Virus record (IMG/VR): IMGVR_UViG_3300046536_000256 | Location: 1 to 64,000 of that record | Length of the DNA: 64,000 nt | Reading direction: 5' to 3' (one strand) | Shown here: positions 10,183-50,800 of the stretch, in pieces | Position numbering within the stretch: the first letter of the stretch is position 1 | Layout of the letters: each line of letters begins with the position of its first letter | Translations under genes and position numbers: made by a program | Notes under the pieces: model-generated | Seen by the model: only the letters and a program-made list of their open reading frames with translations | What the model was told of the DNA's origin: nothing | Databases searched by the model: none

Positions 10183-10920
10183 TTATTTCTTGGGCAACGA
10201 CAGCGTCTTACGCCCCTTAGTCCGTTCTTCCACACCGCCCAACATCATCAAGAAAGTCCTGGCGGCAGCAATAACTTCCCGGGCTTTAACAACAGACGGG
10301 TGGTCATGAGGGTGCTTCGTGTTGACCAAGAAGCTGGTATTGACCTCAATCGCCTTCTCTGCTTTCACCCGGGCTTCTTCAGCCGTGTCGATCTTTGGCA
10401 TTGGGTTACTACAACCCAGAAGCTCTTTAACAACACGTTCTTCCAACGCGGACACATCAGTTTCGTGGTAGGTGGTCTTCTGACCCCAGTGGACGTTCTC
10501 TTCTTTATAGCTGTCTTTAAAGGACAGAGGGTCGTGTCCCGTTTCCAGGATTGGGCCGCCGATAGGGGGGTTGTCAGGAAAGGTAACTTCCGCCGGCCCA
10601 CCAAACTCCGCTTTACCAAACTGTAGCCGACGAGGCTGGCGAGCGCCGTAGGGCAATTCCAACAACGGACCACCTCTTAGTTTAGGAAGCGGTGGTTCAG
10701 CCTGGATCTGTTTCTGTTTCAGTTCAGCGCACGAAGCGATTACGGCGTCGTGGAATTCCGCGGTAGTCTGGTCCGCACTTGCCCCGGTTAACTTGTCTGC
10801 CCACTCGTCAAACGCGTCATGAGCCTCATCGTGAGAGCACTCGTGAATCCCGCGGTACAGATCAATCCACTGTTCCATCGACTGGTGGAGAGATGCTGCT
10901 TTTCTGCTAACGTTGTTCAT
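10183..10920 (-). CDS. hypothetical protein with weak copy of the dispersed helical motif
   Basis: Start reassigned to MNNVSRK (ATGA overlap at 10917-10920). QWIDLYRGIHECSHDEA resembles the repeated motif. Confidence 0.65.
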   Translation of the reverse strand: MNNVSRKAASLHQSMEQWIDLYRGIHECSHDEAHDAFDEWADKLTGASADQTTAEFHDAVIASCAELKQKQIQAEPPLPKLRGGPLLELPYGARQPRRLQFGKAEFGGPAEVTFPDNPPIGGPILETGHDPLSFKDSYKEENVHWGQKTTYHETDVSALEERVVKELLGCSNPMPKIDTAEEARVKAEKAIEVNTSFLVNTKHPHDHPSVVKAREVIAAARTFLMMLGGVEERTKGRKTLSLPKK

Positions 10921-11042
10921 ACCAAGTTTTCCAATTTGACCAGACCAAAACAAACGTACACAACGACGATTGCTAGCGATACGAGGGTTGCACCACCGAG
11001 GATAATGACCGCCTTACGGAGGTCTGCTTTGTTAGTGCGCAT
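10917..11042 (-). CDS. small single-TM protein (41 aa)
   Basis: Hand-found: MRTNKADLRKAVIILGGATLVSLAIVVVYVCFGLVKLENLV; AAGGAG SD. Confidence 0.6.
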   Translation of the reverse strand: MRTNKADLRKAVIILGGATLVSLAIVVVYVCFGLVKLENLV

Positions 11043-11051
11043 GTTCACTCC

Positions 11052-11513
11052 TTAAAAGCGGAAAGTAGTTTTAACAACCCGACCTTGCTCGATCGAGGTG
11101 TCATACAACGGTTGAGGTTCATTCACCTTAGCCGGCTGATACAGGTAAGTGCAAGATGTGTAGATATCCTTCACATCCAAGTCTGATGGGTTACCAACGG
11201 TAACCGTGGCCATACCTTTACCGTCATCGGAGATAAACAGCATCCGATGACGACTGGCCTGATAATAGGCTCGCACTACACCCTTCAAGTCAGAGGCATC
11301 GGGGTTGACTGCCGTGTACGAGTTACCGCCATGAACCACCCCTGTGCCGGTCAGAATAAACCCATTGGTAATAGGTTGAATCTGAGTAACCCCTGGATCA
11401 CCCTGCCCTGTGGCGTGTTCGTACTCACCGCACAGGATACCGTTTGGAATGTCATCGGCTACAGCGGATAGCGACAACAGCGAAACTACTACGCCTACGA
11501 ACAACGATTTCAT
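11052..11513 (-). CDS. exported/periplasmic protein
   Basis: Sec signal MKSLFVGVVVSLLSLSAVA, beta-rich mature part, two Cys. Confidence 0.7.
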   Translation of the reverse strand: MKSLFVGVVVSLLSLSAVADDIPNGILCGEYEHATGQGDPGVTQIQPITNGFILTGTGVVHGGNSYTAVNPDASDLKGVVRAYYQASRHRMLFISDDGKGMATVTVGNPSDLDVKDIYTSCTYLYQPAKVNEPQPLYDTSIEQGRVVKTTFRF

Positions 11514-12046
11514 GCAGCCTCTCCTTGAGATTTACGGATTAGTTCCTCCAGTTCAATTGCTTCGATTGCGCGCAAGTGATCGGCAATGGCTTTACGGAAT
11601 TCGTTCAGCTTCTGTTTAAAGGAGCTGGACTCACCGGCACGCTTGAAGTCCCAACGGATTTCAAAGTCGTACAGTCCTTCACCGAAGATTTGCAGAATCA
11701 ATGTCTCTTTCGATACAAAGCCATGGAAGAACAACGGCTTGTCTTGGCACAGCACGCGGCTGAAAGGTTCGGTCGGGTCGATGGTCGCCCAACGCTCGAT
11801 CTCTTCCAGCATGCCGATTTGTTCGTACAGATCTTGCTGGTACGCGTTCAGTTGTTTGTTGAAGAAGACCAGGTCATTGGTCGCAGGGATGTCAACACGG
11901 TTGGCCCACTTGCCGTGTTTACCGAAATCGAACTCAACCCCAAAACGCAGGTCGCTGTGTTTGTTACGATGAGCCTCGGACAGAATCACGATGGAACGGT
12001 TCAAGAACGAAGCAGCCAGTTTACGGTCGCTGAAGATTACAGACAT
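11510..12046 (-). CDS. hypothetical protein
   Basis: 178 aa downstream of the promoter at 12117; ATGA overlap with the next gene. Confidence 0.7.
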   Translation of the reverse strand: MSVIFSDRKLAASFLNRSIVILSEAHRNKHSDLRFGVEFDFGKHGKWANRVDIPATNDLVFFNKQLNAYQQDLYEQIGMLEEIERWATIDPTEPFSRVLCQDKPLFFHGFVSKETLILQIFGEGLYDFEIRWDFKRAGESSSFKQKLNEFRKAIADHLRAIEAIELEELIRKSQGEAA

Positions 12047-12116
12047 GGTGAAGCTCCTAATAATTCGAGTGCAGTTCTTTACACCCGGTAAAAAGTTTAA
12101 TTGGTGTTACGGCAAA

Positions 12117-12131
12117 GTAATATAGGTTTGA
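12117..12131 (-). promoter_or_regulatory. putative early promoter TCAAACCTATATTAC
   Basis: Exact copy of the repeated motif in an AT-rich intergenic region. Confidence 0.75.
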
Positions 12132-12148
12132 AACTTAATGTAAGTTAA

Positions 12149-12589
12149 TTAAGCTTCGGCCATCCCGATGGTAATTGCAACAAACCCCATGGATTGGTAG
12201 AAAGCTAAGGAACCTCGGTTCCCCATAATGGAATTAACCTTCAGCTTACCAGGGTTGAACTCTTTCAACTTTGTAACCAACTGCCGGGCAATCCCCTTGC
12301 GACGGTGGGTCTCCGCCACAAACAGCTCGGAGATGGATTCAGGGTCATCGTGGGAGATCGAAACAAACCCCACGATCCGGCTGCCTTCTTTCGCTAACAC
12401 GAGCTTGTCGATGTTAGCAAAGGCTTCCATGGTCATGCGCTCACGATCCTCAGCGGAGATCGGGAACTTATCCTTAAAGAAGCTGTAATCTAATTCAGCC
12501 AACTCCCGGTACAGCTCAAACAAACCCAGGAAGAAAATATTGGAGGAATCCACATTGGCCAACTGCGTGTAGCGGATAAGAGCAGACAT
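12149..12589 (-). CDS. GNAT family acetyltransferase
   Basis: IVGFVSI, ISELFVAETHRRKGIARQLV (acetyl-CoA motif A), N..SLAFYQSMGF (motif B). Confidence 0.9.
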   Translation of the reverse strand: MSALIRYTQLANVDSSNIFFLGLFELYRELAELDYSFFKDKFPISAEDRERMTMEAFANIDKLVLAKEGSRIVGFVSISHDDPESISELFVAETHRRKGIARQLVTKLKEFNPGKLKVNSIMGNRGSLAFYQSMGFVAITIGMAEA

Positions 12590-12707
12590 CGAAAAATCCT
12601 TAATCGATTAATGAACCGGACGACCGGTAACGTATGTGCAGCAAGGTAAAAATAAAGCATACTCAACCACAGAACCCGAAGGCCCTGTGGTTGAGTTAAC
12701 GTTAAGA

Positions 12708-12968
12708 TTACTGGATAGAGACAATATCGTCTTTAATACCGCGACCAACGAACTGCTGTCCGTTAAAGATAACAAACCCTTCCGGATCAACGTACACGTG
12801 CCCTGTTTGGCAGAGCTCACCATTGACACTTATGGTGCGGGCGCCACGGATGGATACACCCATCGCCACTAGGTAAGCAGAAATCGCTCGCGCAACTTCT
12901 TCGCCGGTCAGGTCAATACTTACCCCGGGACCGAACTTAGTCGTGCCATTGCCGTATCTAACTTCCAT
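12708..12968 (-). CDS. hypothetical protein
   Basis: Start reassigned to MEVRYGNG (AGGAGGT SD); 86 aa. Confidence 0.65.
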   Translation of the reverse strand: MEVRYGNGTTKFGPGVSIDLTGEEVARAISAYLVAMGVSIRGARTISVNGELCQTGHVYVDPEGFVIFNGQQFVGRGIKDDIVSIQ

Positions 12969-12981
12969 TACCAAAGACCTC

Positions 12982-13443: not shown

Positions 13444-13481
13444 CTGTGTTTCTCCTAGTTACAAGTTGTATTGCTTAGTGC

Positions 13482-14331: not shown

Positions 14332-14377
14332 ATTTCAAGTCCTTGTACAACAAGTTAAAAGGTTTACTTACCGACTA

Positions 14378-14392
14378 GTGATATAGACCCAA
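14378..14392 (-). promoter_or_regulatory. variant promoter motif TTGGGTCTATATCAC
   Basis: Degenerate copy; shares the downstream AACCTTTTAACTT leader with the 5491 site. Confidence 0.45.
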
Positions 14393-14409
14393 CGCGATCT
14401 ACAAGTTAA

Positions 14410-14538
14410 TTACTTGCTAACCGCAGTACCACTAGCACCTTTGTAATACACCAGCGTCAAAGCCCCGGCAGAACAACCACCGAAGACCAGAACCACCATG
14501 AGGATAATTCCCCGCATCAAGATAGAACGCTTAGCCAT
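14410..14538 (-). CDS. small membrane protein (42 aa)
   Basis: Hand-found: MAKRSILMRGIILMVVLVFGGCSAGALTLVYY...; overlaps the upstream stop. Confidence 0.55.
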   Translation of the reverse strand: MAKRSILMRGIILMVVLVFGGCSAGALTLVYYKGASGTAVSK

Positions 14539-15334
14539 TACTTTTGCTCTTGAACCATTGATCTAGAGTTTTAGGTCGACGCTCCGGCATGTAGCCAACG
14601 GCGCCCATGTGGAAACCAAAGCGCCCAATCGGTTTGATCCGCGATTGGTTACAGATCTCCCGGAACCGATTACGAGATAGAGGAACACTCGGGCCATTGG
14701 TGTGGTCGATGACAAGATTGTCAAGGGCTGTTCTCTCAACCAGTGCCCGCATGACTTGTCTCAGTCCAACCGCAGTGAAACCTTTACCGAAGCCCTCCAA
14801 AGTAGCTCCGTCATGCAGAACGGCAAAGACTTTGATCTTGGGATAGTCGGTGTAGATTTCAATGCCTTCAGACGAGGAGGCCTTGATTAGCACCCAGTAT
14901 TCACGGATTACCGCTAGGACCGGGTAGTCCCTTTTGAACAAGCCATTGCTCGTAGCCTGCTTGAACATACGTTCGATTTCTGACGAATACATCTCGTGCT
15001 CCTTCTGGGTATTGCGAGAGCCGTCAACGCAGATTGGATGCGGAGTCAATTCTCCGGTGATCAACTTCTTGAGCGCCGCGCGCATTACATCTTCAGCCAA
15101 GCGGACGTGGTTAGTCCCGTCCGCTACAGGGAAGCCCATACCGACGTGGTCTTTCCCATACCTGTGAACACTCAGCATCACTTGGTTCTCAGAGTAGTCC
15201 GAATAGATAGTCAGACCGCCGTCAGCTGTTTTGTGGATCTTGACCTCATGCCCGCCCAGCAATACAACCTTTTCAATACCGTCAAACAGCCCGTTGTCGA
15301 CCAGCAAACCAAACAACTTGCGTAAAAGTTTCAT
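14531..15334 (-). CDS. hypothetical protein with internal domain duplication
   Basis: NGLF...IY(S/T)DY...VMRA occurs twice. Confidence 0.7.
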   Translation of the reverse strand: MKLLRKLFGLLVDNGLFDGIEKVVLLGGHEVKIHKTADGGLTIYSDYSENQVMLSVHRYGKDHVGMGFPVADGTNHVRLAEDVMRAALKKLITGELTPHPICVDGSRNTQKEHEMYSSEIERMFKQATSNGLFKRDYPVLAVIREYWVLIKASSSEGIEIYTDYPKIKVFAVLHDGATLEGFGKGFTAVGLRQVMRALVERTALDNLVIDHTNGPSVPLSRNRFREICNQSRIKPIGRFGFHMGAVGYMPERRPKTLDQWFKSKSNG

Positions 15335-15381
15335 AGATCGTTCCTACTAAACGCCTCCCCGGTTAGGAGGAGGCGCTATCG

Positions 15382-15978
15382 TTACTGTTGCTTACCGAAC
15401 TTGATCGGTTCTTGCTTGCCGGTATCGAATGCCGCCGCAGTCTTGGAGTCAGACACCACTTGACAAGACTTCTTCAGATCGAGACGAGGGAAGCCAGCAA
15501 AAGACAGGAGCTTGCCGCGCCAGAACCAGCCGAGCATGTTCTCGTACGTCCCACAGGCTTCCAGTTTTCGCGATTGGGCAATTTGGAATTCCTTCCGCCC
15601 ACCTTCGATCACGTCTTGTATTTTCAAGTAGAGTTTGCTGTTCAGTGTGGGGTTCTGTTCTTTGATCCACTGAACAACCGCCTTGTTCCCGTCAGGTCCA
15701 TTACGACTTTGGAAGGTCGTTCGCAACGTATCCTTCAAGTCGCCGGCATACATGCTGGCAACGCCGGCCGTTTCCTGGATGGTCAAGGTGACCGTACTCA
15801 GTACGTTTTCCGAGTCCTTGTCCAGCTTGGTGATGGTGGTTTCGGCGTTAACCGCCGAGTCGTGCGCGCTGGTGTACGTCCCCATAATCGTCACGCCGAC
15901 CAAAAGCAAACCAACCAACAGCACACCCAGGATACAACCTACCAGCATCCCGGCGGACATTTTCTTCGTAGTACTCAT
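15382..15978 (-). CDS. LemA-like membrane-anchored helical protein
   Basis: One N-terminal TM, coiled-coil body, C-terminal YENMLGWFWRGKLLSFAGFP resembling the LemA YN..i..FP...iA...GF end. Confidence 0.5.
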   Translation of the reverse strand: MSTTKKMSAGMLVGCILGVLLVGLLLVGVTIMGTYTSAHDSAVNAETTITKLDKDSENVLSTVTLTIQETAGVASMYAGDLKDTLRTTFQSRNGPDGNKAVVQWIKEQNPTLNSKLYLKIQDVIEGGRKEFQIAQSRKLEACGTYENMLGWFWRGKLLSFAGFPRLDLKKSCQVVSDSKTAAAFDTGKQEPIKFGKQQ

Positions 15979-17084
15979 GCGAATCTTTCCTTAGTCTGAA
16001 AAACATCTTCTTTAATGAAGAAGTAAGTGATGGCACCCGTTACCGAAAGGTTCAGTAGCACCAGTAGAACAACCCACCAAGTTGGCGGGTCTATCGCTTC
16101 CGTCATGTAAGCGAAGTCTTCGTTTGGCACGCGATTGAAATCTTTCTTGATCAAAGCATACTGCTCTTTAACCACGTCGATTCCAAACGCACGCTCGTAC
16201 GTCAAGGTTTGCAATTGCTTCAACAGAATCTGGTTGTTCTGTCCATCGGCGAACGACATTGCCTTTGCCCATTGGATCTGCTCGTTGTCATCGACACCGT
16301 AAAACAAGATGACGTCGTTCTTCCGAGGACCCTTCCAGTACTCCATGAGTGCATAGAAATAGTCTGGACCGTTTTTGGTTACGACCAAGATTATGTTCAT
16401 TTGCTTTAGGACGGCATCTTTAGTCAGCTGGTTGTTCAGCCAAATGTTGATGTCGTCATAATCCTGCTTGGTATCGTCCACTACACGGTAGAAGTTGTAA
16501 TAGTCGTACGGCAACGGATAAGAAGGCAACACCCCCACATACTTCGCAGAGATGGTTGGGTCTGTCTTGAAGCGGTTATCATCGATCAGGAGGTAGTTTC
16601 GCACCATCTCCGTCTCAGACGCAGGATCACCCACTTCCACGTCGCTCCAGCGCGGCGGCTCGCCCAAGCCACGGCGGTCTATTCGGTCAATCGTGTATCG
16701 GGTACCCAACGAGGTACGCACGTCCCAGTCGACGTCATAGGAGTGCTCATGGCAATACTTCGGCGAGCACGACCGTGAGGTAGTTGCTTTGCCCTTCGAG
16801 TCACGAGAGGTTGACGTTGTACACGTTTCCCCGCACTGATACGAATGACTGCATGAAACCTCATCACGATCTTTGCTGGTTACGTAACCGTTGATCACAT
16901 CAAAGTCGTGTGACTTCATAACCCCCGCCATTGCCAGCAACCCAAGACACAGCAACGTGGATACACCCACTGCCCCCAGTTGGCACAGCCACTCTTTCCA
17001 GCAGATCTTGTGGCCCCAGAAGAACTTGCAAAACGTGATCAAAATAATGGAGGGTATAGCCATTATCGCAAGGTAGAATCCCAT
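15975..17084 (-). CDS. membrane protein with Cys-rich segment and TPM(DUF477)-like domain
   Basis: Two N-terminal TMs, Cys cluster (CSHSYQCGETC...CSPKYC), MNIILVVT...YWKGPRKNDVILFYG, C-terminal TM. Confidence 0.5.
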   Translation of the reverse strand: MGFYLAIMAIPSIILITFCKFFWGHKICWKEWLCQLGAVGVSTLLCLGLLAMAGVMKSHDFDVINGYVTSKDRDEVSCSHSYQCGETCTTSTSRDSKGKATTSRSCSPKYCHEHSYDVDWDVRTSLGTRYTIDRIDRRGLGEPPRWSDVEVGDPASETEMVRNYLLIDDNRFKTDPTISAKYVGVLPSYPLPYDYYNFYRVVDDTKQDYDDINIWLNNQLTKDAVLKQMNIILVVTKNGPDYFYALMEYWKGPRKNDVILFYGVDDNEQIQWAKAMSFADGQNNQILLKQLQTLTYERAFGIDVVKEQYALIKKDFNRVPNEDFAYMTEAIDPPTWWVVLLVLLNLSVTGAITYFFIKEDVFQTKERFA

Positions 17085-17142
17085 TCCGGTTTCCTAATAG
17101 TCCTAAGGAAAGACCCCGGTGGTTAGCCGAGGTCTTCGAGGG

Positions 17143-17769
17143 TTACGCGTTTAGGACACCTTCGCCTTCACCGAACCCCAACAACCCCACACCCATGATG
17201 TGCGCTTGTTCAAACGTGACATCATGGCGGAAGCGCTGGTCGATTACCCACTCCAACGACGGCACATCCGGAACCACCGATTTGATTTCCGGTACTTCCT
17301 GTTCGAAGTCGAAGTCCTTGACGGTCAAACGGTTTATTGCGTACAGGATGAAGGTGAACAACGACACCAAGTGTTTCTGGCTGATACCTTCACGATCTGC
17401 GTAGGTTAACCCCCACAGCCGAACCCCCTCTGCGCTACCAGTGGTGGCAAACAACGAAGGATCGCCCTTGGCGATCAGCGTACGGTAATCCACCTCGCGA
17501 ATGGTCGTAAACAGATCAACCGCTTTCAGGTATTCCTGAATGTCACGTTTCAGCCCGGTCATTTGCGCGATGTACCCCGGCGTAGCACCGGGAACGTTCA
17601 TGGCCAAGTCGAACAGGGTCAACATGGTCCGCAGAGAGTCGTTGGCCTCGACAACCGCTTGGTCGTAGGTCAAACCCTTGGTGACTTGCAGTTCGGCCAC
17701 GTACGGCGACGACAGGGTCTTAGCGACTACATCGAAGATCCCGGTGATTGCTGGTGTATTGTTAACCAT
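17143..17769 (-). CDS. hypothetical protein with dispersed helical motif
   Basis: Start reassigned to MVNNTP; contains EWVIDQRFRHDVTFEQAHIMG and YVAELQVTKGLTYDQA. Confidence 0.7.
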   Translation of the reverse strand: MVNNTPAITGIFDVVAKTLSSPYVAELQVTKGLTYDQAVVEANDSLRTMLTLFDLAMNVPGATPGYIAQMTGLKRDIQEYLKAVDLFTTIREVDYRTLIAKGDPSLFATTGSAEGVRLWGLTYADREGISQKHLVSLFTFILYAINRLTVKDFDFEQEVPEIKSVVPDVPSLEWVIDQRFRHDVTFEQAHIMGVGLLGFGEGEGVLNA

Positions 17770-18286
17770 TGATAAACTTCCCAAAGACACGTTGTTTTCT
17801 GATTCGGCGAAACAAGCCCGAAAACCCAAAGAAAGGGAACAAGGCAATCTTCCCTTTGAAATGTGTTACGTTGTTCTCGATCATCCAAGCCTCGATCAGG
17901 TTGTGCTGAATATCCAGCTCATCCTCGGGGTTCCAACGATCGGCTTGACGCAACCAGCGCGGGTTAGCTTTAATCCGCACTGGGCTGACCACATCACCCA
18001 CCACCATCATGCCGTGATCACCTTGGTCAATAAACTCCTGGATGATCTGCGGATACACCTCGGCCTGACGGAAACATTCTTGCACGTAACCAACAGGATC
18101 TTTGGTCATGGCAATCGAGGTAATCAACCCTACAACCGCCTCAGCAGAATGGTTCTTTGCTTCCCGAGCAGCCAACTTCTTTAGCTTCTTAGGATTCGTG
18201 GTGAAGTTCTCTTTCAGGAACTTAAGGAAAGCAGCTTCCTGCTGGAGGGGAGTCAGCTGCTCTTTTACATCGACTACTTCATCCAT
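17762..18286 (-). CDS. hypothetical protein
   Basis: 174 aa, coupled to the next gene. Confidence 0.7.
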   Translation of the reverse strand: MDEVVDVKEQLTPLQQEAAFLKFLKENFTTNPKKLKKLAAREAKNHSAEAVVGLITSIAMTKDPVGYVQECFRQAEVYPQIIQEFIDQGDHGMMVVGDVVSPVRIKANPRWLRQADRWNPEDELDIQHNLIEAWMIENNVTHFKGKIALFPFFGFSGLFRRIRKQRVFGKFING

Positions 18287-18292
18287 GCTGCT

Positions 18293-18898
18293 TTACACCC
18301 GGTGAGAGATCTGACGCTCGACGATGATTTCGTAAGGGAAGTACATCAATCCCTCGCGCTCTTGTGGAGCAGGACCGACATTCACCCACATCGAAATCCC
18401 CTTCTTGCTTTCAGGGGTTGGGAACAATCGCCTGACCGTAGCGTAGCCCGCCTGATTGATAGCACGGTCCTTGCTGGTGTCGGGGTTTACTTTCATGAAC
18501 CATTCGACCCAGTCCATGTTTACGAACCGACGATCATCAACAGCGCTGAACGGGGTGGGCTCGATGCCAAACTCAGGATGACTGCTTGGAAGCAGATGCA
18601 TCATGCTCTCTTCATGGTCCTTGAAGACTTGAAGACAAGCCTTGACACGGCTGGCTGGAAACTCATGCATCCCCAACCCAGATTCAAATGCCCGCAGACG
18701 CTCATGCAGCCAACGAAGACGTTCGGGGGTTGCACGCAAGATCTCAACGAGCCGGGCTGGGAGATCGGGATACTTATCGACTTCGTGATCGATAAAACCC
18801 TGGATAGTGTTGCCGAGACCGCAATCGTGAATATCACCCAATGGCAGGTCTTTACGCATTTGTTCTTTTTCAGCTTCGTAGTCAGTGCGAACGCTCAT
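18293..18898 (-). CDS. hypothetical protein with dispersed helical motif
   Basis: 201 aa; VNMDWVEWFMKVNPDTSKDRAINQAG. Confidence 0.7.
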   Translation of the reverse strand: MSVRTDYEAEKEQMRKDLPLGDIHDCGLGNTIQGFIDHEVDKYPDLPARLVEILRATPERLRWLHERLRAFESGLGMHEFPASRVKACLQVFKDHEESMMHLLPSSHPEFGIEPTPFSAVDDRRFVNMDWVEWFMKVNPDTSKDRAINQAGYATVRRLFPTPESKKGISMWVNVGPAPQEREGLMYFPYEIIVERQISHRV

Positions 18899-18929
18899 GG
18901 TTGTTATCCTTACAGGGTTATAATTGAGG

Positions 18930-19661
18930 TTAGTACTTCTGAACGGTGACCTTTGTGCCTTCGAGGTGTGCTTCGAGATAGTGAACCTTCTCGAAATACT
19001 TGTACCACACCACCCACTTCATGGACAGTACGGTGCGGTGGATGCCGGCCTTCTTGAACTCAGGTTCAGTGATCCACTTCTCCGGTGCTTCGATAACTCT
19101 TGGACGTGGCAATTCACGGTCCAGTTGTTGCATGATCTTGAGCGCGGCTTCATGGGCTTGGAGAATCCCGATACCCTGTTTATTCGAGTACCACAGCAGC
19201 CACTCGGTACTTGGCTGAAGACCACCATTATTACCGTAGATGCTTGGCTCGTCGCTAGCCGGCTCGTAGCGCGCGGTAGCGGCGATTTCTTTGAGTTCGG
19301 CGATCGACTGCTGCATCCGCTCGATTTGTTGCTCAACACAAATAGCCGCGTGTTCAGCTACCCGGGTAACGTCCATGTTGCGTTGAGTGGCGTAGTACTC
19401 GACCCACTCCCGATTGATATCACTTTTGGCACCCTGAAACAGGGAAGGAATGGGACCGAAGCCGGATTCTTCTGCCTTAGCCGCCAGCCAAGCAAACCGT
19501 TCCATGATGACTTGGATGGTAACTTCGTCACTTGCACCTTTGTTGACCCGTTCCAGCAACTTGGCGAGCTGGTCGATAACAATTGTGTCGGCCCACTCTG
19601 GAAGCTGGAGGTCTTTACGAGACTTGCGGGCTACTGATTCTGGCGAAATGATTTGGACCAT
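18930..19661 (-). CDS. hypothetical protein
   Basis: 243 aa; INREWVEYYATQRNMDVTRVA weak motif copy, plus a coiled-coil segment. Confidence 0.7.
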   Translation of the reverse strand: MVQIISPESVARKSRKDLQLPEWADTIVIDQLAKLLERVNKGASDEVTIQVIMERFAWLAAKAEESGFGPIPSLFQGAKSDINREWVEYYATQRNMDVTRVAEHAAICVEQQIERMQQSIAELKEIAATARYEPASDEPSIYGNNGGLQPSTEWLLWYSNKQGIGILQAHEAALKIMQQLDRELPRPRVIEAPEKWITEPEFKKAGIHRTVLSMKWVVWYKYFEKVHYLEAHLEGTKVTVQKY

Positions 19662-20307
19662 GGTCTAATTCCTTTGAAAATTCACGTTCTTGACGAAGCT
19701 GGTTAATACGTCTAACCGCTTCAAATACTTGCGGCGGGTACTTGGTCTCATCGAACCAACCCCCAATGTACACTTCCAGACAACGGGTGCTGCGCAAGGC
19801 CTCTTTAAAGACCAAATGAATCCCGTTATCTACTTTGAAACTGATTAGGAATTTCCCCATTCCAATCAGCGTCTTGATCGTATCCCCGAGTACAACATTT
19901 GTTAGGCTACAGATGGGAGTACGATACTTCAGGCGGTCAGCAATCACCGCATGAAATTCCCGGGTCACCCCCAACGAGTGGAGTTTGTTCCAAGGCAATT
20001 CTTCTTTTACAACACGCTTAACACTGAGGAAGACCCCTTCGTATTCCGGGGTCCGACTGACAACGCTAAACTCTGCTACCCCTTGGCGCTTACGAGGACC
20101 CTTCTCCCAAGTGAACCCAGAGAGGGCTAACACAGGGTTGTCCTTGTGACCGCTCTTCAGGACACGGTCAGCGTAAGCTTTAAAGAACGGAGAGATCCCG
20201 CACCCTTCACCGATTGATTCGGCTATGTAGGGGCGGAGGCTATCCAAAGTTTTATGCAAATCCTTCACCTGACGAACATTGCTTATTGGCGCAATTTTTC
20301 CGTTCAT
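19615..20307 (-). CDS. hypothetical protein
   Basis: 230-aa ORF in a collinear minus-strand run. Confidence 0.65.
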   Translation of the reverse strand: MNGKIAPISNVRQVKDLHKTLDSLRPYIAESIGEGCGISPFFKAYADRVLKSGHKDNPVLALSGFTWEKGPRKRQGVAEFSVVSRTPEYEGVFLSVKRVVKEELPWNKLHSLGVTREFHAVIADRLKYRTPICSLTNVVLGDTIKTLIGMGKFLISFKVDNGIHLVFKEALRSTRCLEVYIGGWFDETKYPPQVFEAVRRINQLRQEREFSKELDHGPNHFARISSPQVS

Positions 20308-20352
20308 TACTGCTCTCTTATCCAGTCCATAGCGATTCCGGGTACAGTGGAA

Positions 20353-20709
20353 TCATCCCATAGACTCACGATCCCTTTCCATGTCCCGTCTGGTTTGCTC
20401 GTCCAGAGTAATGGTGTGCTGCTTGCACTTACCGCACTTGGACTCCTTAACCAGCTTGAACCCATAAGCAGAAATCAATACCGCTCGACCTTCTGCCATG
20501 ACTTGTGTAGTGATACACTGTCCTTTGCCTGGCAGTTTGACTTTGCGGAAGTTGTCGAATACCGACACACCAAAGGTAGCCAGCGCGTAGTCGTCGAAGA
20601 GCTCTTCTAAAGCTGCTTGGACATTCTCCTTGGGCAACCCCTCAAAGAACACGTCCAAGCGCTTACCGACCTCTTCAGCCACCTCATAATCGAATCGAGG
20701 TTCATTCAT
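20353..20709 (-). CDS. hypothetical protein
   Basis: 118 aa; overlaps the upstream stop; CGKC near the C-terminus. Confidence 0.65.
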   Translation of the reverse strand: MNEPRFDYEVAEEVGKRLDVFFEGLPKENVQAALEELFDDYALATFGVSVFDNFRKVKLPGKGQCITTQVMAEGRAVLISAYGFKLVKESKCGKCKQHTITLDEQTRRDMERDRESMG

Positions 20710-21427
20710 ACGGGAACATTCCGATGGAGCTTTGAAGGATAGAGACCAGACGTCTCAGATCGTTCTCACTGAAAATCCCCTCATCAGTGAAGGTGGCGAT
20801 TGCCTCGCCGTCAAGGATCCGGAGCAAGACCTCCCAGATATTGATGACGTCGGTCTTGTCATTGATACGGTAAATCGCCATTGTTCCGGTCAGATACCCC
20901 ATGACGACACGGAAGTCAGAAAACGTTTTACGTTCCTTATCCGTTACCATGCGGATTCTGATATCACCATCCAGTTGCAGCCACTCGTTAAAATTGGACA
21001 GGTAAACTTCCTGAGCTTCCAGAGTTTTACCCACTTTGGCCTTGATCACGTTGCCCTTCATCATCGCCTCGTAAGGCGTGATGTTGTCCCGCATACACTT
21101 ATCCATTACCCATTCCAAGGTAATGATCCGAGTGCCTTCGATAAACATCACCGGCGGCTCAGCAGGGAGGAACTTGGGGTCAGCCAAGTTCAGGGTCGTT
21201 TTAATTACACCAAGTGCCGCGGACCAACCACCGGTGACCCGACTCCTCAGATCAAAGATAGGCATCGCGTGATCGGTATTACCAGGGAACTTTTCTTTCA
21301 ACATCGCACGGTGTTGAGGGACGACAACCGTTTTCTTGTACCACTCGCCCCAAGCTTCTGGGAAGGCGTGCGGGTGGTCCATAAAAGGACTCGGCTCGTC
21401 TTTTCCAGGAACGTATTGATTTTCCAT
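20702..21427 (-). CDS. hypothetical protein; C-terminal domain paralogous to 21427-21750
   Basis: MVTDKERKTFSDF...EGIFSENDLRRL. Confidence 0.7.
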   Translation of the reverse strand: MENQYVPGKDEPSPFMDHPHAFPEAWGEWYKKTVVVPQHRAMLKEKFPGNTDHAMPIFDLRSRVTGGWSAALGVIKTTLNLADPKFLPAEPPVMFIEGTRIITLEWVMDKCMRDNITPYEAMMKGNVIKAKVGKTLEAQEVYLSNFNEWLQLDGDIRIRMVTDKERKTFSDFRVVMGYLTGTMAIYRINDKTDVINIWEVLLRILDGEAIATFTDEGIFSENDLRRLVSILQSSIGMFPYE

Positions 21428-21750
21428 TATGAGATCATCGCCTTGAACACGTTAGCCAAACGAATGAGGTCGTTCTCGTTGAACTTCTCTTCGTAGAGAT
21501 AGTCGCAACGCAATTCCCCTTCCACTTCGTAGATCCGTGCGCGTGGCTGCTGGATCACGCCGATCGTTTCGTTAACCACGATCACCTTAGCCAGCGGTGC
21601 AATGGACACCAGGAAATCGGTGAACTGTTTACGCTGCGAATCGGTGTGCATGGAGACGTTAACATTCCAACCGCCGTGCTCAACCCAGACTTTCATTTCC
21701 GGGAACCACATACCAGCACCCAGAAGAGGTTTTTCCATTACTTGTGTCAT
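21427..21750 (-). CDS. hypothetical protein (single copy of the domain in 20702-21427)
   Basis: Start reassigned to MTQVMEK (AAGGA SD); MHTDSQRKQFTDF...EEKFNENDLIRL. Confidence 0.7.
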   Translation of the reverse strand: MTQVMEKPLLGAGMWFPEMKVWVEHGGWNVNVSMHTDSQRKQFTDFLVSIAPLAKVIVVNETIGVIQQPRARIYEVEGELRCDYLYEEKFNENDLIRLANVFKAMIS

Positions 21751-21760
21751 TGTTTGTTCC

Positions 21761-22603
21761 TTATTTGGATTCTTCAAACCAAGGATCGGTTGGATCCATT
21801 GGGTCGTGGTATTTGATTTTAACCAAGAGGGGATCACTTGGGTCCCATGGAAGGATCTCCACGTTCTTCCGCATCTTGCCGTGAGCAAACTCATTGTCAA
21901 TCATGGACTTAGCGCCCACTTCGAAAGCATGACTGTGGTTAACACCATACGTCTCAACACACCAGTCCAACCACTCCTTGTTCAGACGACGACGATTGAC
22001 GGTGTCCAGTAGACACGGTTCGTTCTTTGACGGACGCAGGTCCGCGATCATAACCGGCTGGGAAACGTTATCTATCACCAGTCGTGGAGTAAGCTGGGAC
22101 TTTACCAAGCCTTCGAGTTCCTCAAAGACCCTATCCATGTCGCTTCCAGGAACCCACCCACGGAGATAGGCTTCCAAAGGAGCAGGGTCCATAGGTGTAC
22201 GCCAGGTAACCTCGCTAGGATCTGGGATGTGAGAAGACATGATCCGATTACCTCGGAGATCGTGACCGGGTTCTGGTCCTATTGCGGTTGGCTTAGTTCT
22301 ACCGTAAAAGGCATCACGAACCGAATCGACAACTTTCTCGACAACAGCTGCGTCTTGAAGAGGGCGGTTACCTTGCCAAGGGTTCTGGGTAACCTCCCCA
22401 CACGACGCATTGGGGTCGGTGTACATCCCCAGCTGAGCCGCTCTCCGACACTCCGAGTGACCCACGTCCTTTTCTTTAGGACCTTGTCCCATGAAACCTG
22501 GGTTATGCGGCTCATCCAGAAAGTCGATTACTTCTTTGGATACTTTAACTGGCTTGTCCAAACCCAAGAACAAACGAACCCCTTTGTACAGTTGTGTGAA
22601 CAT
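21761..22603 (-). CDS. hypothetical protein with dispersed helical motif
   Basis: 280 aa; LNKEWLDWCVETYGVNHSHAFEVG. Confidence 0.7.
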   Translation of the reverse strand: MFTQLYKGVRLFLGLDKPVKVSKEVIDFLDEPHNPGFMGQGPKEKDVGHSECRRAAQLGMYTDPNASCGEVTQNPWQGNRPLQDAAVVEKVVDSVRDAFYGRTKPTAIGPEPGHDLRGNRIMSSHIPDPSEVTWRTPMDPAPLEAYLRGWVPGSDMDRVFEELEGLVKSQLTPRLVIDNVSQPVMIADLRPSKNEPCLLDTVNRRRLNKEWLDWCVETYGVNHSHAFEVGAKSMIDNEFAHGKMRKNVEILPWDPSDPLLVKIKYHDPMDPTDPWFEESK

Positions 22604-22605
22604 GA

Positions 22606-23025
22606 TTACTCCTTAAGCTTATAAGAGAACACCGCGGGCTTAACTGACCAGTCTGACGGGAACTTGAGCGGGATGGCTTCGATAGAAGGCCACGATTCGA
22701 TCGGTTTGATGTGTCTTGGATCATTAATCAAATCGTTCAAAACCTTGGTGAATTCCTCAGCCCGCGTGCTCGACTTGATCATGGGTAATTCGATGATCCC
22801 GTCTTTACAGATCACCGGGTTAACTTCGCTAGCCAACTTGAGGATCTCTTCCACCGTGCCAAGTGGGGGCAAGGAAAAGAACTCCTTGCCCCACAATGCC
22901 ATCCAACGACTGATCGGGGTGTTCTTGTGTTCTTCAAACGTGAACTCGATCGCTGGTCGACGGTTAATGCGATAGATGCCTCCATCAGGGGCCACAGCGG
23001 TTCTAGGGGTATTTTCTTTTGCCAC
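22606..23025 (-). CDS. hypothetical protein
   Basis: 139 aa, AGGAGGT SD, first gene after the promoter at 23066. Confidence 0.7.
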   Translation of the reverse strand: MAKENTPRTAVAPDGGIYRINRRPAIEFTFEEHKNTPISRWMALWGKEFFSLPPLGTVEEILKLASEVNPVICKDGIIELPMIKSSTRAEEFTKVLNDLINDPRHIKPIESWPSIEAIPLKFPSDWSVKPAVFSYKLKE

Positions 23026-23065
23026 GATACTAACCTCCTAATAAAAGAATTCGTTATTCACAGTA

Positions 23066-23080
23066 GTAATATAGGTTTGA
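23066..23080 (-). promoter_or_regulatory. putative early promoter TCAAACCTATATTAC
   Basis: Exact copy of the repeated motif. Confidence 0.75.
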
Positions 23081-23110
23081 GTAATTGTAAAAATCAATTT
23101 AACGAACATA

Positions 23111-23143
23111 ACCCTACTCCGTCCTTTCGGCGCGGAGTAGGGT
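23111..23143 (-). terminator. stem-loop followed by TATGTT
   Basis: 11-bp stem ACCCTACTCCG / CGGAGTAGGGT after the stop at 23150. Confidence 0.65.
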
Positions 23144-23149
23144 TAGTAC

Positions 23150-24343
23150 TTATGCCGCTTCTTTCAGCTCAGGGCACTCGTCACGCAATGCGTACGCGAT
23201 ATTGCCAACGGCGGAGTTCGTGATGTTGAGGAAGGTGAGAATACCGGATGTGGCGTTCAGGCTGCAACTGAGGTCGAACAGATCGTCGCTCAGCTCATCG
23301 TGCTTCTTCTCATCCTGGTTCTTGGTGATCTCGTCCTTCAGTTTGGCCATCTTGCTTTTCACGTCAGTATGAATCTCCTGGATCTTCTTCTTGCTACCCT
23401 CAGTCTGATCAAGGGCACGCTTACTGTCAGCGATCCAAGATTTGGCCGCACTGACACTCTTGAAGTAGTCAGGGTGTGTACCGTTAACAAACCCCTCGAG
23501 AGCTTCGATAACGGCACCGGTCCTGACAGACATCTCTGTGTAGATCTTTCGGGCGCGTTCGCTGAACGACTTATCTTCGGCGCTTTCAACGAAGGACTCT
23601 TTGCGGGTCTTGATGGTCGCGAGGGCCTTGTCGAGACTTTCGCAGTTTCTTTTGATGGCGGTGGCATTCAACACGGAGAGCTCGAACACCTCCTTAACCA
23701 ACTGAATAACCTGCGGGACCGCCTTTGCGACTTCGGCGGGAGTTGGTTTACCGGCTTCACCAGCGGGCTTGGAATCAGCCGACTTAGATTTGTCGTCAGA
23801 CCCGCTCTTAGCCGGCTCAGATTTGGACGAGCTTTTGCCGATCTTGAGATCTTCCTTGACTTCTTCGACCTTCTTTTCCAGCTTGGTCTTTTCCGGGCCA
23901 GCTGGAAGTTTTTCAACCTTGGCTTCAACAGCCTTCACGGCGGACACAACGTTAGCCGGAGTAACCTTTGGAGCCTCCATCGCTTTAACCGCCACTTCAG
24001 CCTCAGCAACGGTTGCCTTGATCTTTGCGTCCTTCTCAGCGGCCGGTTTACCGAAGAGGAATTCCCAGAGCGATTTGAACATCTTCTGGATGTATTCCCA
24101 CATCTTCGAGATGCCTTTACCGATGGTGCCGAACAACCCGCCTTCTTCGTTACCGGTAATTTCGTCGAGACCAGATTCCAGACCGGCGGCGTACATGACA
24201 CCGTGTACGTAGCGTTGCGCGGCAGTAAGGTTCATGCCCTCACTGCCGGTGACTGTGTCAATAAACCCGGTCATCACTTTTTCAACGTGACTTGGATCTG
24301 GAATTTCGTTGTAATCGTCAGCAAAATCAACAATATGGTGCAT
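23150..24343 (-). CDS. phiKZ-type internal head protein
   Basis: Acidic N-terminal propeptide ending AGLESGLDEITGNE, then EGGLFGTIGKGISKMWEYIQKMFKSLWEFLFG amphipathic helix, then a long K/E/A helical body. Confidence 0.7.
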   Translation of the reverse strand: MHHIVDFADDYNEIPDPSHVEKVMTGFIDTVTGSEGMNLTAAQRYVHGVMYAAGLESGLDEITGNEEGGLFGTIGKGISKMWEYIQKMFKSLWEFLFGKPAAEKDAKIKATVAEAEVAVKAMEAPKVTPANVVSAVKAVEAKVEKLPAGPEKTKLEKKVEEVKEDLKIGKSSSKSEPAKSGSDDKSKSADSKPAGEAGKPTPAEVAKAVPQVIQLVKEVFELSVLNATAIKRNCESLDKALATIKTRKESFVESAEDKSFSERARKIYTEMSVRTGAVIEALEGFVNGTHPDYFKSVSAAKSWIADSKRALDQTEGSKKKIQEIHTDVKSKMAKLKDEITKNQDEKKHDELSDDLFDLSCSLNATSGILTFLNITNSAVGNIAYALRDECPELKEAA

Positions 24344-24410
24344 ACATTTCCCCTGGTGTACCGAATAAGTTAATGACCTATAGCATTCGAGGAAACAAAA
24401 AAATAAAGTA

Positions 24411-24448
24411 AGGTAACCAACGGAGGCCGCAACCCCCGTTGGTTATCT
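24411..24448. terminator. stem-loop, putative terminator
   Basis: AGGTAACCAACGG / CCGTTGGTTATCT; A-rich flank gives a U-tract on minus. Confidence 0.6.
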
Positions 24449-24449
24449 C

Positions 24450-24971
24450 TTATCGATGTATCGGTATTACTGTAGCGGTGCACTCTTTACCCCCATCCCT
24501 GCTTCCAATGCGGAAGCCGTTGTAACCGCCACCGGCCCGAGGGCCAAATAGCTCGCTGTACCCCATCGTGTAAGCCACCTGGAAACTTACCCCGTACCGA
24601 TGACGATAGTCCATTACAAAAGCCATGGACACTAAAGCTTCGTCAGCTAACGATACCGGTGGTAGTGGATCATCCAAATCGATGTAGCGTCGTGGTTCTT
24701 CTGAAAGGTGGTTATACAGCGCGGTACCGATGTTGACGGCCATGCTGTGACTCAGGCCGTATTTCATCATCGACCAACGCACCCAACGTGGATGCACTGC
24801 TCCCTCACCCCGTGTAAATAAACTAGGTTCTGTAGGTTCCGGTGTGTACTCCGACCGACCTGGTACCTTAAGCACCGGTGTAACGGTTTGGAGAATCCCG
24901 AAGAGCGGCATTGCCAAAGAACGCATTGCCCCTACGACCCCAAGACTTGCTGAAGTAGCTTTATTAATCAC
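24450..24971 (-). CDS. hypothetical protein with two copies of the dispersed helical motif
   Basis: Probable GTG start after GAGG; RWVRWSMMKYGLSHSMAVNIG and AFVMDYRHRYGVSFQVAYTMG. Confidence 0.65.
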   Translation of the reverse strand: MINKATSASLGVVGAMRSLAMPLFGILQTVTPVLKVPGRSEYTPEPTEPSLFTRGEGAVHPRWVRWSMMKYGLSHSMAVNIGTALYNHLSEEPRRYIDLDDPLPPVSLADEALVSMAFVMDYRHRYGVSFQVAYTMGYSELFGPRAGGGYNGFRIGSRDGGKECTATVIPIHR

Positions 24972-50799: not shown

Positions 50800-50800
50800 A

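What the first reader, a model, noticed from the sequence alone, without database searches (positions are those of the whole stretch)
10810..24797. A ~25-aa helical micro-domain dispersed over at least six otherwise unrelated genes
Seen, consensus (W/F)V-x7-(Y/H)GVS-x3-A-x3-G. Strong copies: AFVMDYRHRYGVSFQVAYTMG (24561-24632), EWVIDQRFRHDVTFEQAHIMG (17192-17256), RWVRWSMMKYGLSHSMAVNIG (24726-24797), EWLDWCVETYGVNHSHAFEVG (21914-21985) and DWVEWFMKVNPDTSKDRAINQAG (18447-18525). Weaker copies: EWVEYYATQRNMDVTRVA (19347-19419), QWIDLYRGIHECSHDEA (10810-10880) and YVAELQVTKGLTYDQA. The flanking sequences are unrelated and often low-complexity. Inference: a mobile helix-turn-helix tag that docks many early proteins onto one partner, such as the phage nucleus shell or import gate, a membrane protein or a host complex. 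I know no described family matching it.
Basis: partly seen in the sequence, partly recalled or inferred. Interest (0 to 1): 0.72.

Follow-up and report, generated by a model that had tools for sequence, protein, structure and literature searches.

The report
New two-unit domain in jumbo-phage early proteins
The repeated motif is real: it is half of an undescribed ~48-residue unit that usually pairs into a ~105-residue domain, found in seven early-operon proteins of this nucleus-forming jumbo phage and in relatives such as Pseudomonas phage EL, with its function still unknown.

Summary

**What the motif is**
- The unit has an extended arm with (D/E)-E-P-S-x-F, about 10 residues, W-x2-W in helix A, a turn, then helix B.
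- Thirteen significant units lie in seven minus-strand genes. Six are in the window (17143, 18293, 18930, 20702, 21761, 24450) and one lies at 171367.
- A profile built only from other genomes scores these seven ORFs at 26-97 bits. The best score in shuffled proteomes is 8.8 bits.
- The 10183 copy is not supported.

**The wider family**
- An exhaustive search found 95 representatives, three of them this genome's own. Of the 92 from elsewhere, 73 have two units; their median length is 156 aa.
- The two unit types are homologous (hhalign probability 97%).
- AlphaFold2 predicts the paired domain at pLDDT 95-98.
- No Pfam family or structural relative was found. Window proteins match no PHROG. Phage EL has four members.

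**Context**
- The genome is an EL-like, chimallin-encoding jumbo phage.
- The genes sit behind an early-type promoter motif.

**Function**
- Function is inferred only. The most likely reading is an autonomous protein-binding domain of a diversifying early-protein family.
- The "docking tag" idea is neither shown nor excluded.

The parts
24450..24971 (-). Gene for a 173-aa family member. The likely start is GTG at 24971, after a GAGG. The protein has a hydrophobic N-terminus, a two-unit domain and a Gly-rich tail.
   Evidence: Start inferred from the sequence and from homologues P0003 and P0005. AF2 gives pLDDT 95-98 for residues ~38-143.
24714..24851 (-). Unit 1 of the 24450 protein (arm with EPSLF, then W-x2-W helix, YGLS turn, second helix).
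24543..24689 (-). Unit 2 of the 24450 protein.
   Evidence: strand 111-115, then helices 116-126 and 130-142
24414..24445 (-). Terminator-like hairpin with a 14-bp stem, directly after the 24450 gene.
23066..23079 (-). Early-type promoter motif CAAACCTATATTAC, heading the run of minus-strand genes from 23025 down to 17143.
   Evidence: Exact copies in intergenic DNA. It shares its core with the published EL and phiKZ motifs (PMC7058600). Such motifs mark early promoters read by the virion RNA polymerase (PMC7598289).
21761..22603 (-). Gene for a 280-aa protein with a unique N-terminal ~190 aa and one lone unit.
   Evidence: E 3.9e-8. The unit is conserved in the orthologue on L003.
21896..22042 (-). 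Lone unit of the 21761 protein.
21430..21750 (-). Gene for a stand-alone 107-aa protein that is homologous to the C-terminal domain of the 20702 protein. It is not a member of the unit family.
   Evidence: BLASTP: 27% identity, E 4e-11
20702..21427 (-). Gene for a 241-aa protein: an N-terminal two-unit domain fused to a C-terminal domain that also exists alone next door.
   Evidence: leave-one-out E 1.3e-5; E 2e-17
21281..21418 (-). Unit 1 of the 20702 protein (DEPSPF ... W-x2-W).
21035..21184 (-). Unit 2 of the 20702 protein.
18930..19661 (-). Gene for a 243-aa protein with three units, of types 1, 1 and 2.
   Evidence: (E 5e-9). A 57%-identical orthologue keeps all three units.
19326..19475 (-). 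Unit A of the 18930 protein.
   Evidence: E 2.9e-5
19125..19271 (-). Unit B of the 18930 protein (DEPSIY ... EWLLWY).
   Evidence: AF2 model of this unit: pLDDT 93.
18939..19091 (-). Unit C of the 18930 protein (type 2).
18293..18898 (-). Gene for a 201-aa protein with a unique N-terminal ~145 aa and one lone unit. This gene is absent from the syntenic contig L003.
   Evidence: E 7e-5; 26.5 bits
18428..18586 (-). Lone unit of the 18293 protein.
17143..17769 (-). Gene for a 208-aa protein made almost wholly of three units, of types 1, 1 and 2.
   Evidence: three stretches
17641..17748 (-).
   Evidence: Weak in this genome. Orthologues show xPxxFD ... W-L-A-E-Y.
17338..17484 (-). Middle unit of the 17143 protein (GDPSLF ... 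LWGL).
17185..17316 (-). C-terminal type-2 unit of the 17143 protein.
17085..17142 (-). Possible hairpin at the end of the operon. Its T-run is weak and the scan did not call it.
   Evidence: Read from the intergenic sequence. Not listed.
10810..10880 (-). It is not a significant member. At most it is a degenerate type-2 hairpin at the extreme N-terminus (W-x13-EAH).
   Evidence: Absent. The stretch is conserved in the orthologue.

Best explanation
**What it is (well supported).** The motif is the helical half of a ~48-residue unit.
- The unit has an extended arm carrying (D/E)-E-P-S-x-F that folds back as a small beta-hairpin. Helix A follows and begins W-V-x-W. After a short turn (often G-hydrophobic-S/T) comes helix B, with A-x3-G.
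- Two diverged copies normally sit in tandem and are predicted to form one compact ~105-residue domain. Type 1 reads Y-x-P-x3-EPS-x-F ... W-x2-W. Type 2 reads P ... S-(L/M)-x-W-V ... E-A-H-x2-G.
- The family is undescribed. It is found in Pseudomonas phage EL and in related uncultivated jumbo phages, and it has been amplified in this EL-like, chimallin-encoding phage to seven genes.
- Five of those genes lie in one presumptive early operon (about 23.08 to 17.1 kb). A sixth ends at a strong terminator at 24.4 kb.
- Architectures vary by duplication and fusion: stand-alone pair, 1-1-2 triplets, lone units after unrelated N-terminal regions, and one fusion to a domain whose stand-alone copy is the neighbouring gene.

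**How it works (inferred, not shown).** I take it to be an autonomous protein-binding domain of early, non-virion proteins.
- The near-invariant aromatic and proline residues build the fold. The unusually conserved unit-1 arm may add a fixed contact.
- The rest of the surface, and the fused regions, diversify between paralogues. On this reading the family supplies a set of early host-takeover or counter-defence binders, not a passive address label.
For: **Reality and homology of the unit**
- Leave-one-out searches, external-profile searches and shuffled controls all support it.
- The exhaustive profile search gave 95 hits at E<=1e-3 among 1.84 billion representatives.
- Type 1 and type 2 profiles align in register at 97% probability, E 4e-11.
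- The motif stretches are conserved in orthologues of 31-57% identity.

**Fold**
- AF2 gives pLDDT 93 for one unit.
- It gives pLDDT 95-98 over residues ~38-143 of the 24450 protein, with pTM 0.66 despite about 65 disordered residues.

**Autonomy of the domain**
- Of 92 external representatives, 73 have two units. Median length is 156 aa, and 59 are 185 aa or shorter.

**Not DNA-binding-like**
- Median pI of the matched protein stretches is 6.2.
- No HTH or RHH Pfam model matches, even at E<=10.

**Conservation pattern**
- Conserved positions are Y, P, E-P, F, W and W, with the rest variable. The unit-1 arm is far more conserved than the unit-2 arm.

**Early, non-virion context**
- The promoter motif CAAACCTATATTAC sits at 23066-23079. 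A related copy lies just upstream of the chimallin gene, and another lies upstream of the 171367 member.
- The literature links such motifs to early promoters read by the virion polymerase (PMC7598289, PMC7058600).
- The EL members are annotated as hypothetical, not structural.
- Another 234-kb phage contig carries at least five members within 12 kb, beside an Acb1 gene.

**Domain shuffling**
- The C-terminal domain of the 20702 protein matches the product of 21430-21750.
Against: - No binding partner, localisation or phenotype is known for any member. The functional part rests on analogy with other small early phage proteins.
- No fused domain of known function was found to give a lead.
- The single complex prediction returned no answer.
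- Packing of the two units is inferred from pLDDT and pTM only. Coordinates could not be inspected.
- Early expression is inferred from a promoter motif, not measured.
Confidence: 0.45

Rival explanations
1. The module is a transferable docking or sorting domain that brings many early proteins to one common partner. Candidates are the chimallin shell, the PicA/Imp1 import site, the early infection vesicle, or a host complex.
For: - The unit-1 arm is almost invariant across a family that otherwise shares 15-25% identity (Y 97%, E 98%, P 99%, W 100%). The equivalent unit-2 arm is loose. This asymmetry suggests a functional contact beyond fold stability.
- The module is fused to unrelated regions in the 21761, 18293, 171367 and 20702 proteins and in EL gp89 and gp92.
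- The phage encodes chimallin.
- Import cargo is recognised as folded surfaces, which a small domain could supply (PMC12908238).
Against: - Most family members consist of the domain alone, with no cargo.
- The family was not found in nine of ten other chimallivirus-type genomes searched. These included phiKZ, 201phi2-1, SPN3US, RisingSun and OBP. A core sorting signal for conserved machinery is therefore unlikely.
- No interaction was tested successfully.
Confidence: 0.2
2. The unit is a self-association module. Type 1 and type 2 units pack within a chain. Lone units (the 21761 and 18293 proteins, EL gp84) and the spare unit of the 1-1-2 proteins pair between chains. Family members would then form homo- or hetero-oligomers.
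For: - The two units are homologous and are predicted as one confident body. This is the usual outcome when a dimerising unit duplicates.
- Lone-unit and three-unit architectures exist.
Against: - The homodimer prediction for the lone unit gave no answer. The score was 0.00, the chains folded poorly, and this is not evidence either way.
- A single unit alone is predicted confidently as a monomer.
- Oligomerisation would not by itself explain what the proteins do.
Confidence: 0.15
3. The domain binds nucleic acid. Each unit would act as a ribbon-helix-helix-like or HTH-like element, and the tandem pair as a single-chain pseudo-dimer regulating early phage or host gene expression.
For: - Predicted unit topology is strand, helix, tight turn, helix, about 45 aa. 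The turn is G-x-S/T/N in the window's strong copies.
- Weak Foldseek alignments to the RHH protein ORF56 and to homeodomain hairpins.
Against: - No RHH or HTH Pfam model matches any of 102 units at E<=10.
- Structure searches give E>=3 or Z<=3.7, and RHH chains do not rank near the top.
- Median pI is 6.2 and no basic residue is conserved.
- The G of the turn is not conserved across the family.
Confidence: 0.1
4. The resemblance is chance, or a generic helix-capping pattern (G-hydrophobic-S/T-x2-E-A) with no common ancestry.
For: The G-V-S-x-E-x-A stretch alone also matches designed helical repeat proteins and a proteasome subunit at E about 0.4. The helix-cap part taken alone is therefore generic.
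Against: - The full unit, including the upstream EPSxF arm and W-x2-W, scores 26-97 bits against 8.8 bits or less in shuffles.
- It recovers a coherent family from 1.84 billion proteins.
- It is conserved in orthologues.
Confidence: 0.01

Closest known systems
Pseudomonas phage EL gp89 and gp92 (PHROG 31119, unknown function), gp84 and gp133 (hypothetical proteins)
   Same: - They carry the same unit or units, found with a family profile at E 4e-8 to 2e-4.
- gp89 and gp92 have NEPS(L/V)F ... W-x-x-W-Y plus a type-2 unit at the C-terminus. gp133 is a bare pair. gp84 has a lone unit whose turn and helix B closely resemble the 21761 unit.
- BFVD lists gp133 as the only probable structural match, probability 0.98.
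- EL's chimallin is 53% identical to this genome's.
   Different: - None has a described function.
- The window's proteins do not reach PHROG 31119. That family is defined by the EL-specific N-terminal domain.
- The window phage has more members (seven against four) and different fusions.
Ribbon-helix-helix (Arc/MetJ/CopG) superfamily
   Same: Similar unit size and strand-helix-turn-helix order. The window's strong copies have a G-x-S/T/N turn. The domain works as a pair of units.
   Different: - No sequence or profile match.
- No convincing structural match.
- The domain is acidic to neutral.
- An extra EPSxF arm pairs with the strand inside each unit. No inter-unit ribbon is seen in the secondary-structure read-out.
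phiKZ-like internal head protein paralogues (Pfam PF12699; phiKZ gp92-97, gp162, gp163)
   Same: The phenomenon is the same: one paralogous domain shared by many proteins encoded side by side in a chimallivirus (bioRxiv 10.1101/2024.03.24.586471).
   Different: That is a different domain. The window proteins have no PF12699 match. The phiKZ proteins are virion-packaged and proteolysed. The present genes lie behind early-type promoters, and the EL homologues are not annotated as structural.
Cargo recognition by the chimallivirus importer PicA/Imp1
   Same: Import depends on surface residues of a folded protein and can be transferred by fusing a folded domain such as GFPmut1 (PMC12908238).
   Different: No link between this family and PicA was tested. 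PicA is a core chimallivirus gene, whereas this family is patchy.

Membership tests
Undescribed two-unit family (EL gp84/gp89/gp92/gp133-like) | Significant match to a unit profile built only from proteins of other genomes | tested here: met
   Seven ORFs score 26.5-96.7 bits. The shuffled maximum is 8.8 bits. The two-unit profile gives E 8e-36 to 7e-5.
Undescribed two-unit family (EL gp84/gp89/gp92/gp133-like) | Type-1 signature Y-x-P-x3-4-E-P-S-x-F ... W-x2-W and type-2 signature P ... S-(L/M)-x-W-V ... E-A-H-x2-G | tested here: met
   The window units are listed. Lone units and the 17143 units are partly degenerate.
Undescribed two-unit family (EL gp84/gp89/gp92/gp133-like) | Predicted arm plus alpha-hairpin unit, with two units forming one confident domain | tested here: met
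   pLDDT 93 for one unit. pLDDT 95-98 and pTM 0.66 for the pair. Inter-unit packing is inferred, because coordinates could not be inspected.
Classical DNA-binding helix-turn-helix domains | Match to an HTH family model | tested here: not met
   No Pfam family for the window proteins, for 54 full-length members, or for 102 units at E<=10.
Classical DNA-binding helix-turn-helix domains | Three-helix core with a recognition helix, and a basic surface | tested here: not met
   There are two helices per unit. Median pI is 6.2 and no basic residue is conserved.
Ribbon-helix-helix superfamily | Strand-helix-helix unit of about 45 aa | tested here: met
   DSSP of the model shows strand 111-115, helix 116-126 and helix 130-142.
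Ribbon-helix-helix superfamily | Conserved G-x-S/T/N turn between the helices | tested here: inconclusive
   The turn is present in the window's strong copies. It is not among the conserved columns of the family.
Ribbon-helix-helix superfamily | Sequence or structure match to known RHH proteins | tested here: not met
   No RHH Pfam hit. ORF56 matches only at E 4.9, probability 0.08. No RHH chain is in the VIA top 50.
Ribbon-helix-helix superfamily | Antiparallel beta-ribbon formed between the two units | not testable with these tools
DSSP shows the unit-2 strand paired with its own arm and with residue 49.
phiKZ-like internal head proteins (PF12699) | Match to PF12699 | tested here: not met
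   with a threshold of E<=1
PHROG 31119 (EL gp89/gp92) | Match to the PHROG profile | tested here: not met
   Window proteins have no PHROG at E<=0.01. EL gp89 and gp92 match at E 1e-151 or lower.

The most novel reading that the evidence does not exclude
The two-unit domain, through its near-invariant Y-x-P-x3-EPS-x-F/W-x2-W arm, is a transferable sorting or docking domain. It would send a whole class of early proteins of EL-like nucleus-forming phages to one site, such as the nuclear shell or import site, or the early infection vesicle. That would be the first modular, fusable address domain known for the phage nucleus system, carried on a fold with no known relative.
Probability: 0.12. Interest if true: 0.85.

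Novelty: new variant of a known kind. Interest (0 to 1): 0.5.

Why it matters
Nucleus-forming jumbo phages carry long early operons of proteins without known relatives, and their roles in takeover, compartment building and counter-defence are mostly unknown.

This finding gathers seven such proteins of one phage, four of the cultivable model phage EL, and about 90 metagenomic clusters into one family. The family has a confidently predicted, apparently unmatched fold and a sharply conserved arm.

That gives a concrete, testable handle. EL can be grown on P. aeruginosa, so localisation, pull-downs and knock-downs of gp84, gp89, gp92 and gp133 are feasible.

If the conserved arm binds one partner, it would reveal a shared early target or a sorting principle. 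If the paralogues bind different targets, it is a new scaffold for phage-host protein inhibitors. Either way a Pfam-type family definition can now be written.

Tried and rejected
- **GenBank phage searches.** Megablast and tblastn with the locus and with two family proteins found no match.
- **Pfam and PHROGs on the window proteins.** Nothing was found.
- **Pfam on the wider family.** Nothing on 54 members, on 102 units at E<=10, or on 10 long members. No fused known domain turned up. P0086 and P0095 look like repeat-driven false positives.
- **PDB sequence profile.** It matched only the generic helix cap, at E about 0.4.
- **Structure searches on both models.** PDB Foldseek, AFDB clusters, AFDB Swiss-Prot, ESM Atlas, BFVD and VIA-wide found no relative apart from EL gp133 and gp84.
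- **ESM Atlas feature search.** Nothing.
- **RHH idea.** I considered it because of the strand-helix-GxS-helix pattern. Profiles and structure searches do not support it.
- **DNA-binding HTH.** Rejected on pI and on the lack of matches.
- **Homodimer prediction of the lone 21761 unit.** No answer, which is not evidence either way.
- **Whole-record search of the 234-kb contig L022.** The record is not held.
- **phiKZ chimallin as a direct query.** No hit. PHROG 4795 then identified the chimallin gene.
- **Possible extra copies.** The 112803 ORF scores 12.3 bits and is borderline. The ORFs at 170108(+) and 133136 are likely noise.

Full report
**1. Where the window lies**

The window is the first 64 kb of a 233,283-bp uncultivated virus genome with direct terminal repeats. 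It was assembled from rhizosphere metagenomes.

- A large virion protein is about 55% identical to those of Pseudomonas phage EL and Erwinia phages RisingSun and Joad.
- The genome encodes a nuclear shell protein (chimallin, PHROG 4795, E 4e-133) at 134894-136909, next to an RNA-polymerase beta-prime-like gene. This chimallin is 53% identical to EL's.
- It is therefore an EL-like, nucleus-forming jumbo phage.
- The likely protein-coding genes between about 9.4 and 25 kb all read on the minus strand.

**2. The observation checked**

The seven coordinate pairs translate to the quoted peptides.

About 22 residues upstream of the W there is a second conserved block, (D/E)-E-P-(S)-x-(F/L/Y), often preceded by (R/Q)-Y-x-P. 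The repeated unit is thus about 48 aa.

Thirteen units lie in seven proteins:

| Gene | Units |
|---|---|
| 24450 | 2 |
| 21761 | 1 |
| 20702 | 2 |
| 18930 | 3 |
| 18293 | 1 |
| 17143 | 2, plus a degenerate third |
| 171367-172503 (outside the window) | 2 |

The statistics support this.
- In leave-one-protein-out tests the omitted protein ranks 1st to 3rd of 2,557 six-frame ORFs, with E from 8e-11 to 0.07.
- A unit profile built only from proteins of other genomes gives exactly these seven ORFs 26.5-96.7 bits. The next ORF (112803) gets 12.3 bits, and five shuffled proteomes peak at 8.8 bits.
- A two-unit profile gives the same list.
- The 10183 copy is never recovered. It does keep W-x13-E-A-H, and the stretch is conserved in its orthologue.

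**3. A wider family**

I ran an exhaustive HMMER search of 1.84 billion representatives with the 13-unit profile. It returned 95 proteins at E<=1e-3 and 18 at E<=1e-10. Three are this genome's own.

Of the other 92:
- 73 have two units, 6 have three, 10 have one and 3 have none.
- Median length is 156 aa, and 59 are 185 aa or shorter.

Column statistics on the family alignment (92 rows: 85 external representatives plus the seven proteins of this genome) show two differentiated unit types.
- Type 1: Y (97%), x, P (84%), x3-4, E (98%), P (99%), S (76%), x, F (84%) ... W (100%), x2, W (83%).
- Type 2: P (90%) ... S (80%), L/M, x, W (80%), V (89%) ... E (71%), A (84%), H (51%), x2, G (74%).

Profiles of the two types, built without the window's sequences, align in register with 97% probability, E 4e-11. 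The pair therefore arose by internal duplication.

Sources are Logan, ENA and JGI assemblies, often contigs of 223-236 kb.

- A syntenic contig from a relative (L003) carries orthologues of 31-57% identity, in which the unit blocks are among the best conserved stretches.
- A second 234-kb phage contig (L022) carries at least five members within 12 kb, in a region that also holds Acb1 and RNase H genes.
- Among ten named phage genomes searched, only EL has members. These are gp84 (lone unit), gp89 and gp92 (C-terminal pair) and gp133 (bare pair).
- None was found in RisingSun, FishSpeaker, Miami, VP4B, phiKZ, 201phi2-1, OBP or SPN3US.

**4. Structure**

With the 13 units as each other's alignment, AlphaFold2 predicts one unit at mean pLDDT 93. 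It shows an extended arm with a beta-bridge between the EPSxF aromatic and the residue just before helix A, then two helices.

With a 54-protein alignment, the 173-aa product of 24450 is predicted at pLDDT 95-98 from residue ~38 to ~143. Helices span 61-71, 75-90, 116-126 and 130-142, with short strands at 107-108 and 111-115. pTM is 0.66 even though about 65 terminal residues are disordered. I read this as one compact two-unit domain, but I could not inspect coordinates.

No relative was found in any library:
- PDB by Foldseek, E>=3.
- AlphaFold DB clusters and Swiss-Prot.
- ESM Atlas, TM<=0.37.
- A Foldseek-independent PDB scan, best Z 3.5-3.7.
- BFVD returned only EL gp133 (probability 0.98) and gp84.

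**5. What it is not**

- *No described family.* No Pfam family matches the window proteins, 54 full-length members, or 102 isolated units even at E<=10. No PHROG matches the window proteins.
- *Not a DNA-binding HTH.* The matched protein stretches have a median pI of 6.2, and no basic position is conserved.
- *Not clearly RHH.* The strand-helix-G-x-S-helix order recalls ribbon-helix-helix proteins. Neither profiles nor structure searches support membership, and the turn glycine is not conserved across the family.
- *Not just a helix cap.* The G-hydrophobic-S/T-x2-E-A piece taken alone is a generic helix cap. It also matches designed repeat proteins at E about 0.4. The significance comes from the whole unit.

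**6. Architecture and mobility**

All-against-all BLAST links the window proteins only through the unit region. The N-terminal parts of the 21761, 18293 and 171367 proteins are unrelated to each other.

The C-terminal ~105 aa of the 20702 protein is homologous to the stand-alone 107-aa product of the neighbouring gene 21430-21750 (27% identity, E 4e-11). This is a clear domain fusion.

The 18293 gene is absent from the syntenic contig L003.

Several small relatives begin with a basic amphipathic helix (MKRFFKRVK-like), which may place them on a membrane. This is an inference.

**7. Expression context**

The 14-mer CAAACCTATATTAC occurs 14 times in the genome at two mismatches or fewer. All copies are on the minus strand, and 12 are intergenic.

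- In the window it lies at 1736, 5491, 12117, 23066 and 36990.
- It shares its core with the published EL motif (WTTTYAAACCTACATTATY) and the phiKZ motif (TATATTAC), both given in PMC7058600, table 2.
- Such conserved AT-rich motifs upstream of operons are the early promoters read by the virion RNA polymerase in these phages (PMC7598289).
- One copy lies just upstream of the chimallin gene. Another lies upstream of the 171367 member.
- The copy at 23066-23079 heads the gene run 23025 to 17143, which holds five family genes.
- The 24450 gene ends at a terminator-like hairpin with a 14-bp stem.
- Sigma-70-like promoters are fewer than expected: 3 found against 6.8 expected.

Early expression is thus inferred, not measured.

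**8. Mechanism**

Shown:
- A homologous, conserved, confidently folding two-unit domain.
- Amplification and shuffling of that domain in presumptive early operons.
- No DNA-binding features.

Inferred: it is an autonomous protein-binding domain. Most members are nothing but this domain, the conserved residues are the kind that build a core, and the remaining surface diverges.

The much stronger conservation of the unit-1 arm than of the unit-2 arm hints at an additional fixed contact.

A homodimer prediction for the lone 21761 unit returned no answer. No fused domain of known function gives a lead.

**9. Verdict**

- The family is undescribed. It belongs to a familiar kind of thing, namely lineage-specific paralogous families in jumbo-phage early regions.
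- It is moderately interesting, mainly because phage EL offers a direct experimental route.

Noticed in passing
window 1736-1749, 5491-5504, 12117-12130, 23066-23079, 36990-37003 (all minus strand): Conserved 14-mer CAAACCTATATTAC in intergenic DNA. There are 14 copies genome-wide at two mismatches or fewer, all on the minus strand. One lies just upstream of the chimallin gene. The core is the same as the published EL and phiKZ early-promoter motifs.
   Followed up: partly
window 21430-21750 and 20705-21025 (minus strand): A stand-alone 107-aa protein is homologous to the C-terminal domain of the neighbouring 241-aa family member (27% identity, E 4e-11). This is a local duplication and fusion.
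   Followed up: yes
window 3731-5434 (minus strand): GroEL-like chaperonin gene (PHROG 5725, E 9e-128), a feature also known from phage EL.
   Followed up: no
window 40577-53233 (minus strand): Four adjacent large paralogues (962, 1195, 1190 and 618 aa) share an N-terminal module annotated as virion, tail or tail-fibre protein (PHROGs 2163 and 3573).
   Followed up: no
window 23150-24343 (minus strand): A 397-aa protein with a K/E/A-rich low-complexity centre. It has paralogues elsewhere in the genome (103311-104303, 104320-105411 and, more weakly, 85904-86956).
   Followed up: no
window 17762-18286 (minus strand): A 174-aa protein inside the family operon has a 39%-identical paralogue at 214455-215036. 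It is highly conserved in the relative's contig L003.
   Followed up: no
window 14410-17084 (minus strand): A run of predicted membrane proteins (42, 198 and 369 aa, with hydrophobic N- or C-terminal segments) lies directly downstream of the family operon. The 198- and 369-aa genes keep the same sizes and order in L003.
   Followed up: no
window 12149-12589 (minus strand): GNAT acetyltransferase gene. A similar gene lies near family members in L003, in L022 and in phage EL (gp137, four genes after gp133).
   Followed up: no
genome 112803-113342 (outside the window; locus L002): A borderline possible eighth member (PEPEF ... EWVMW). It scores 12.3 bits against a shuffled maximum of 8.8.
   Followed up: partly
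L020 162-770 and L022 4203-4631: In other phage contigs, family members lie beside an ART-PolyVal ADP-ribosyltransferase domain gene, or about 5 kb from an Acb1 (anti-CBASS) gene. This hints at a counter-defence neighbourhood.
   Followed up: no
window 16900-25500: Sigma-70-type promoter-like sites are fewer than in shuffled sequence (3 against 6.8 +/- 2.4). This fits transcription that does not depend on the host polymerase.
   Followed up: no
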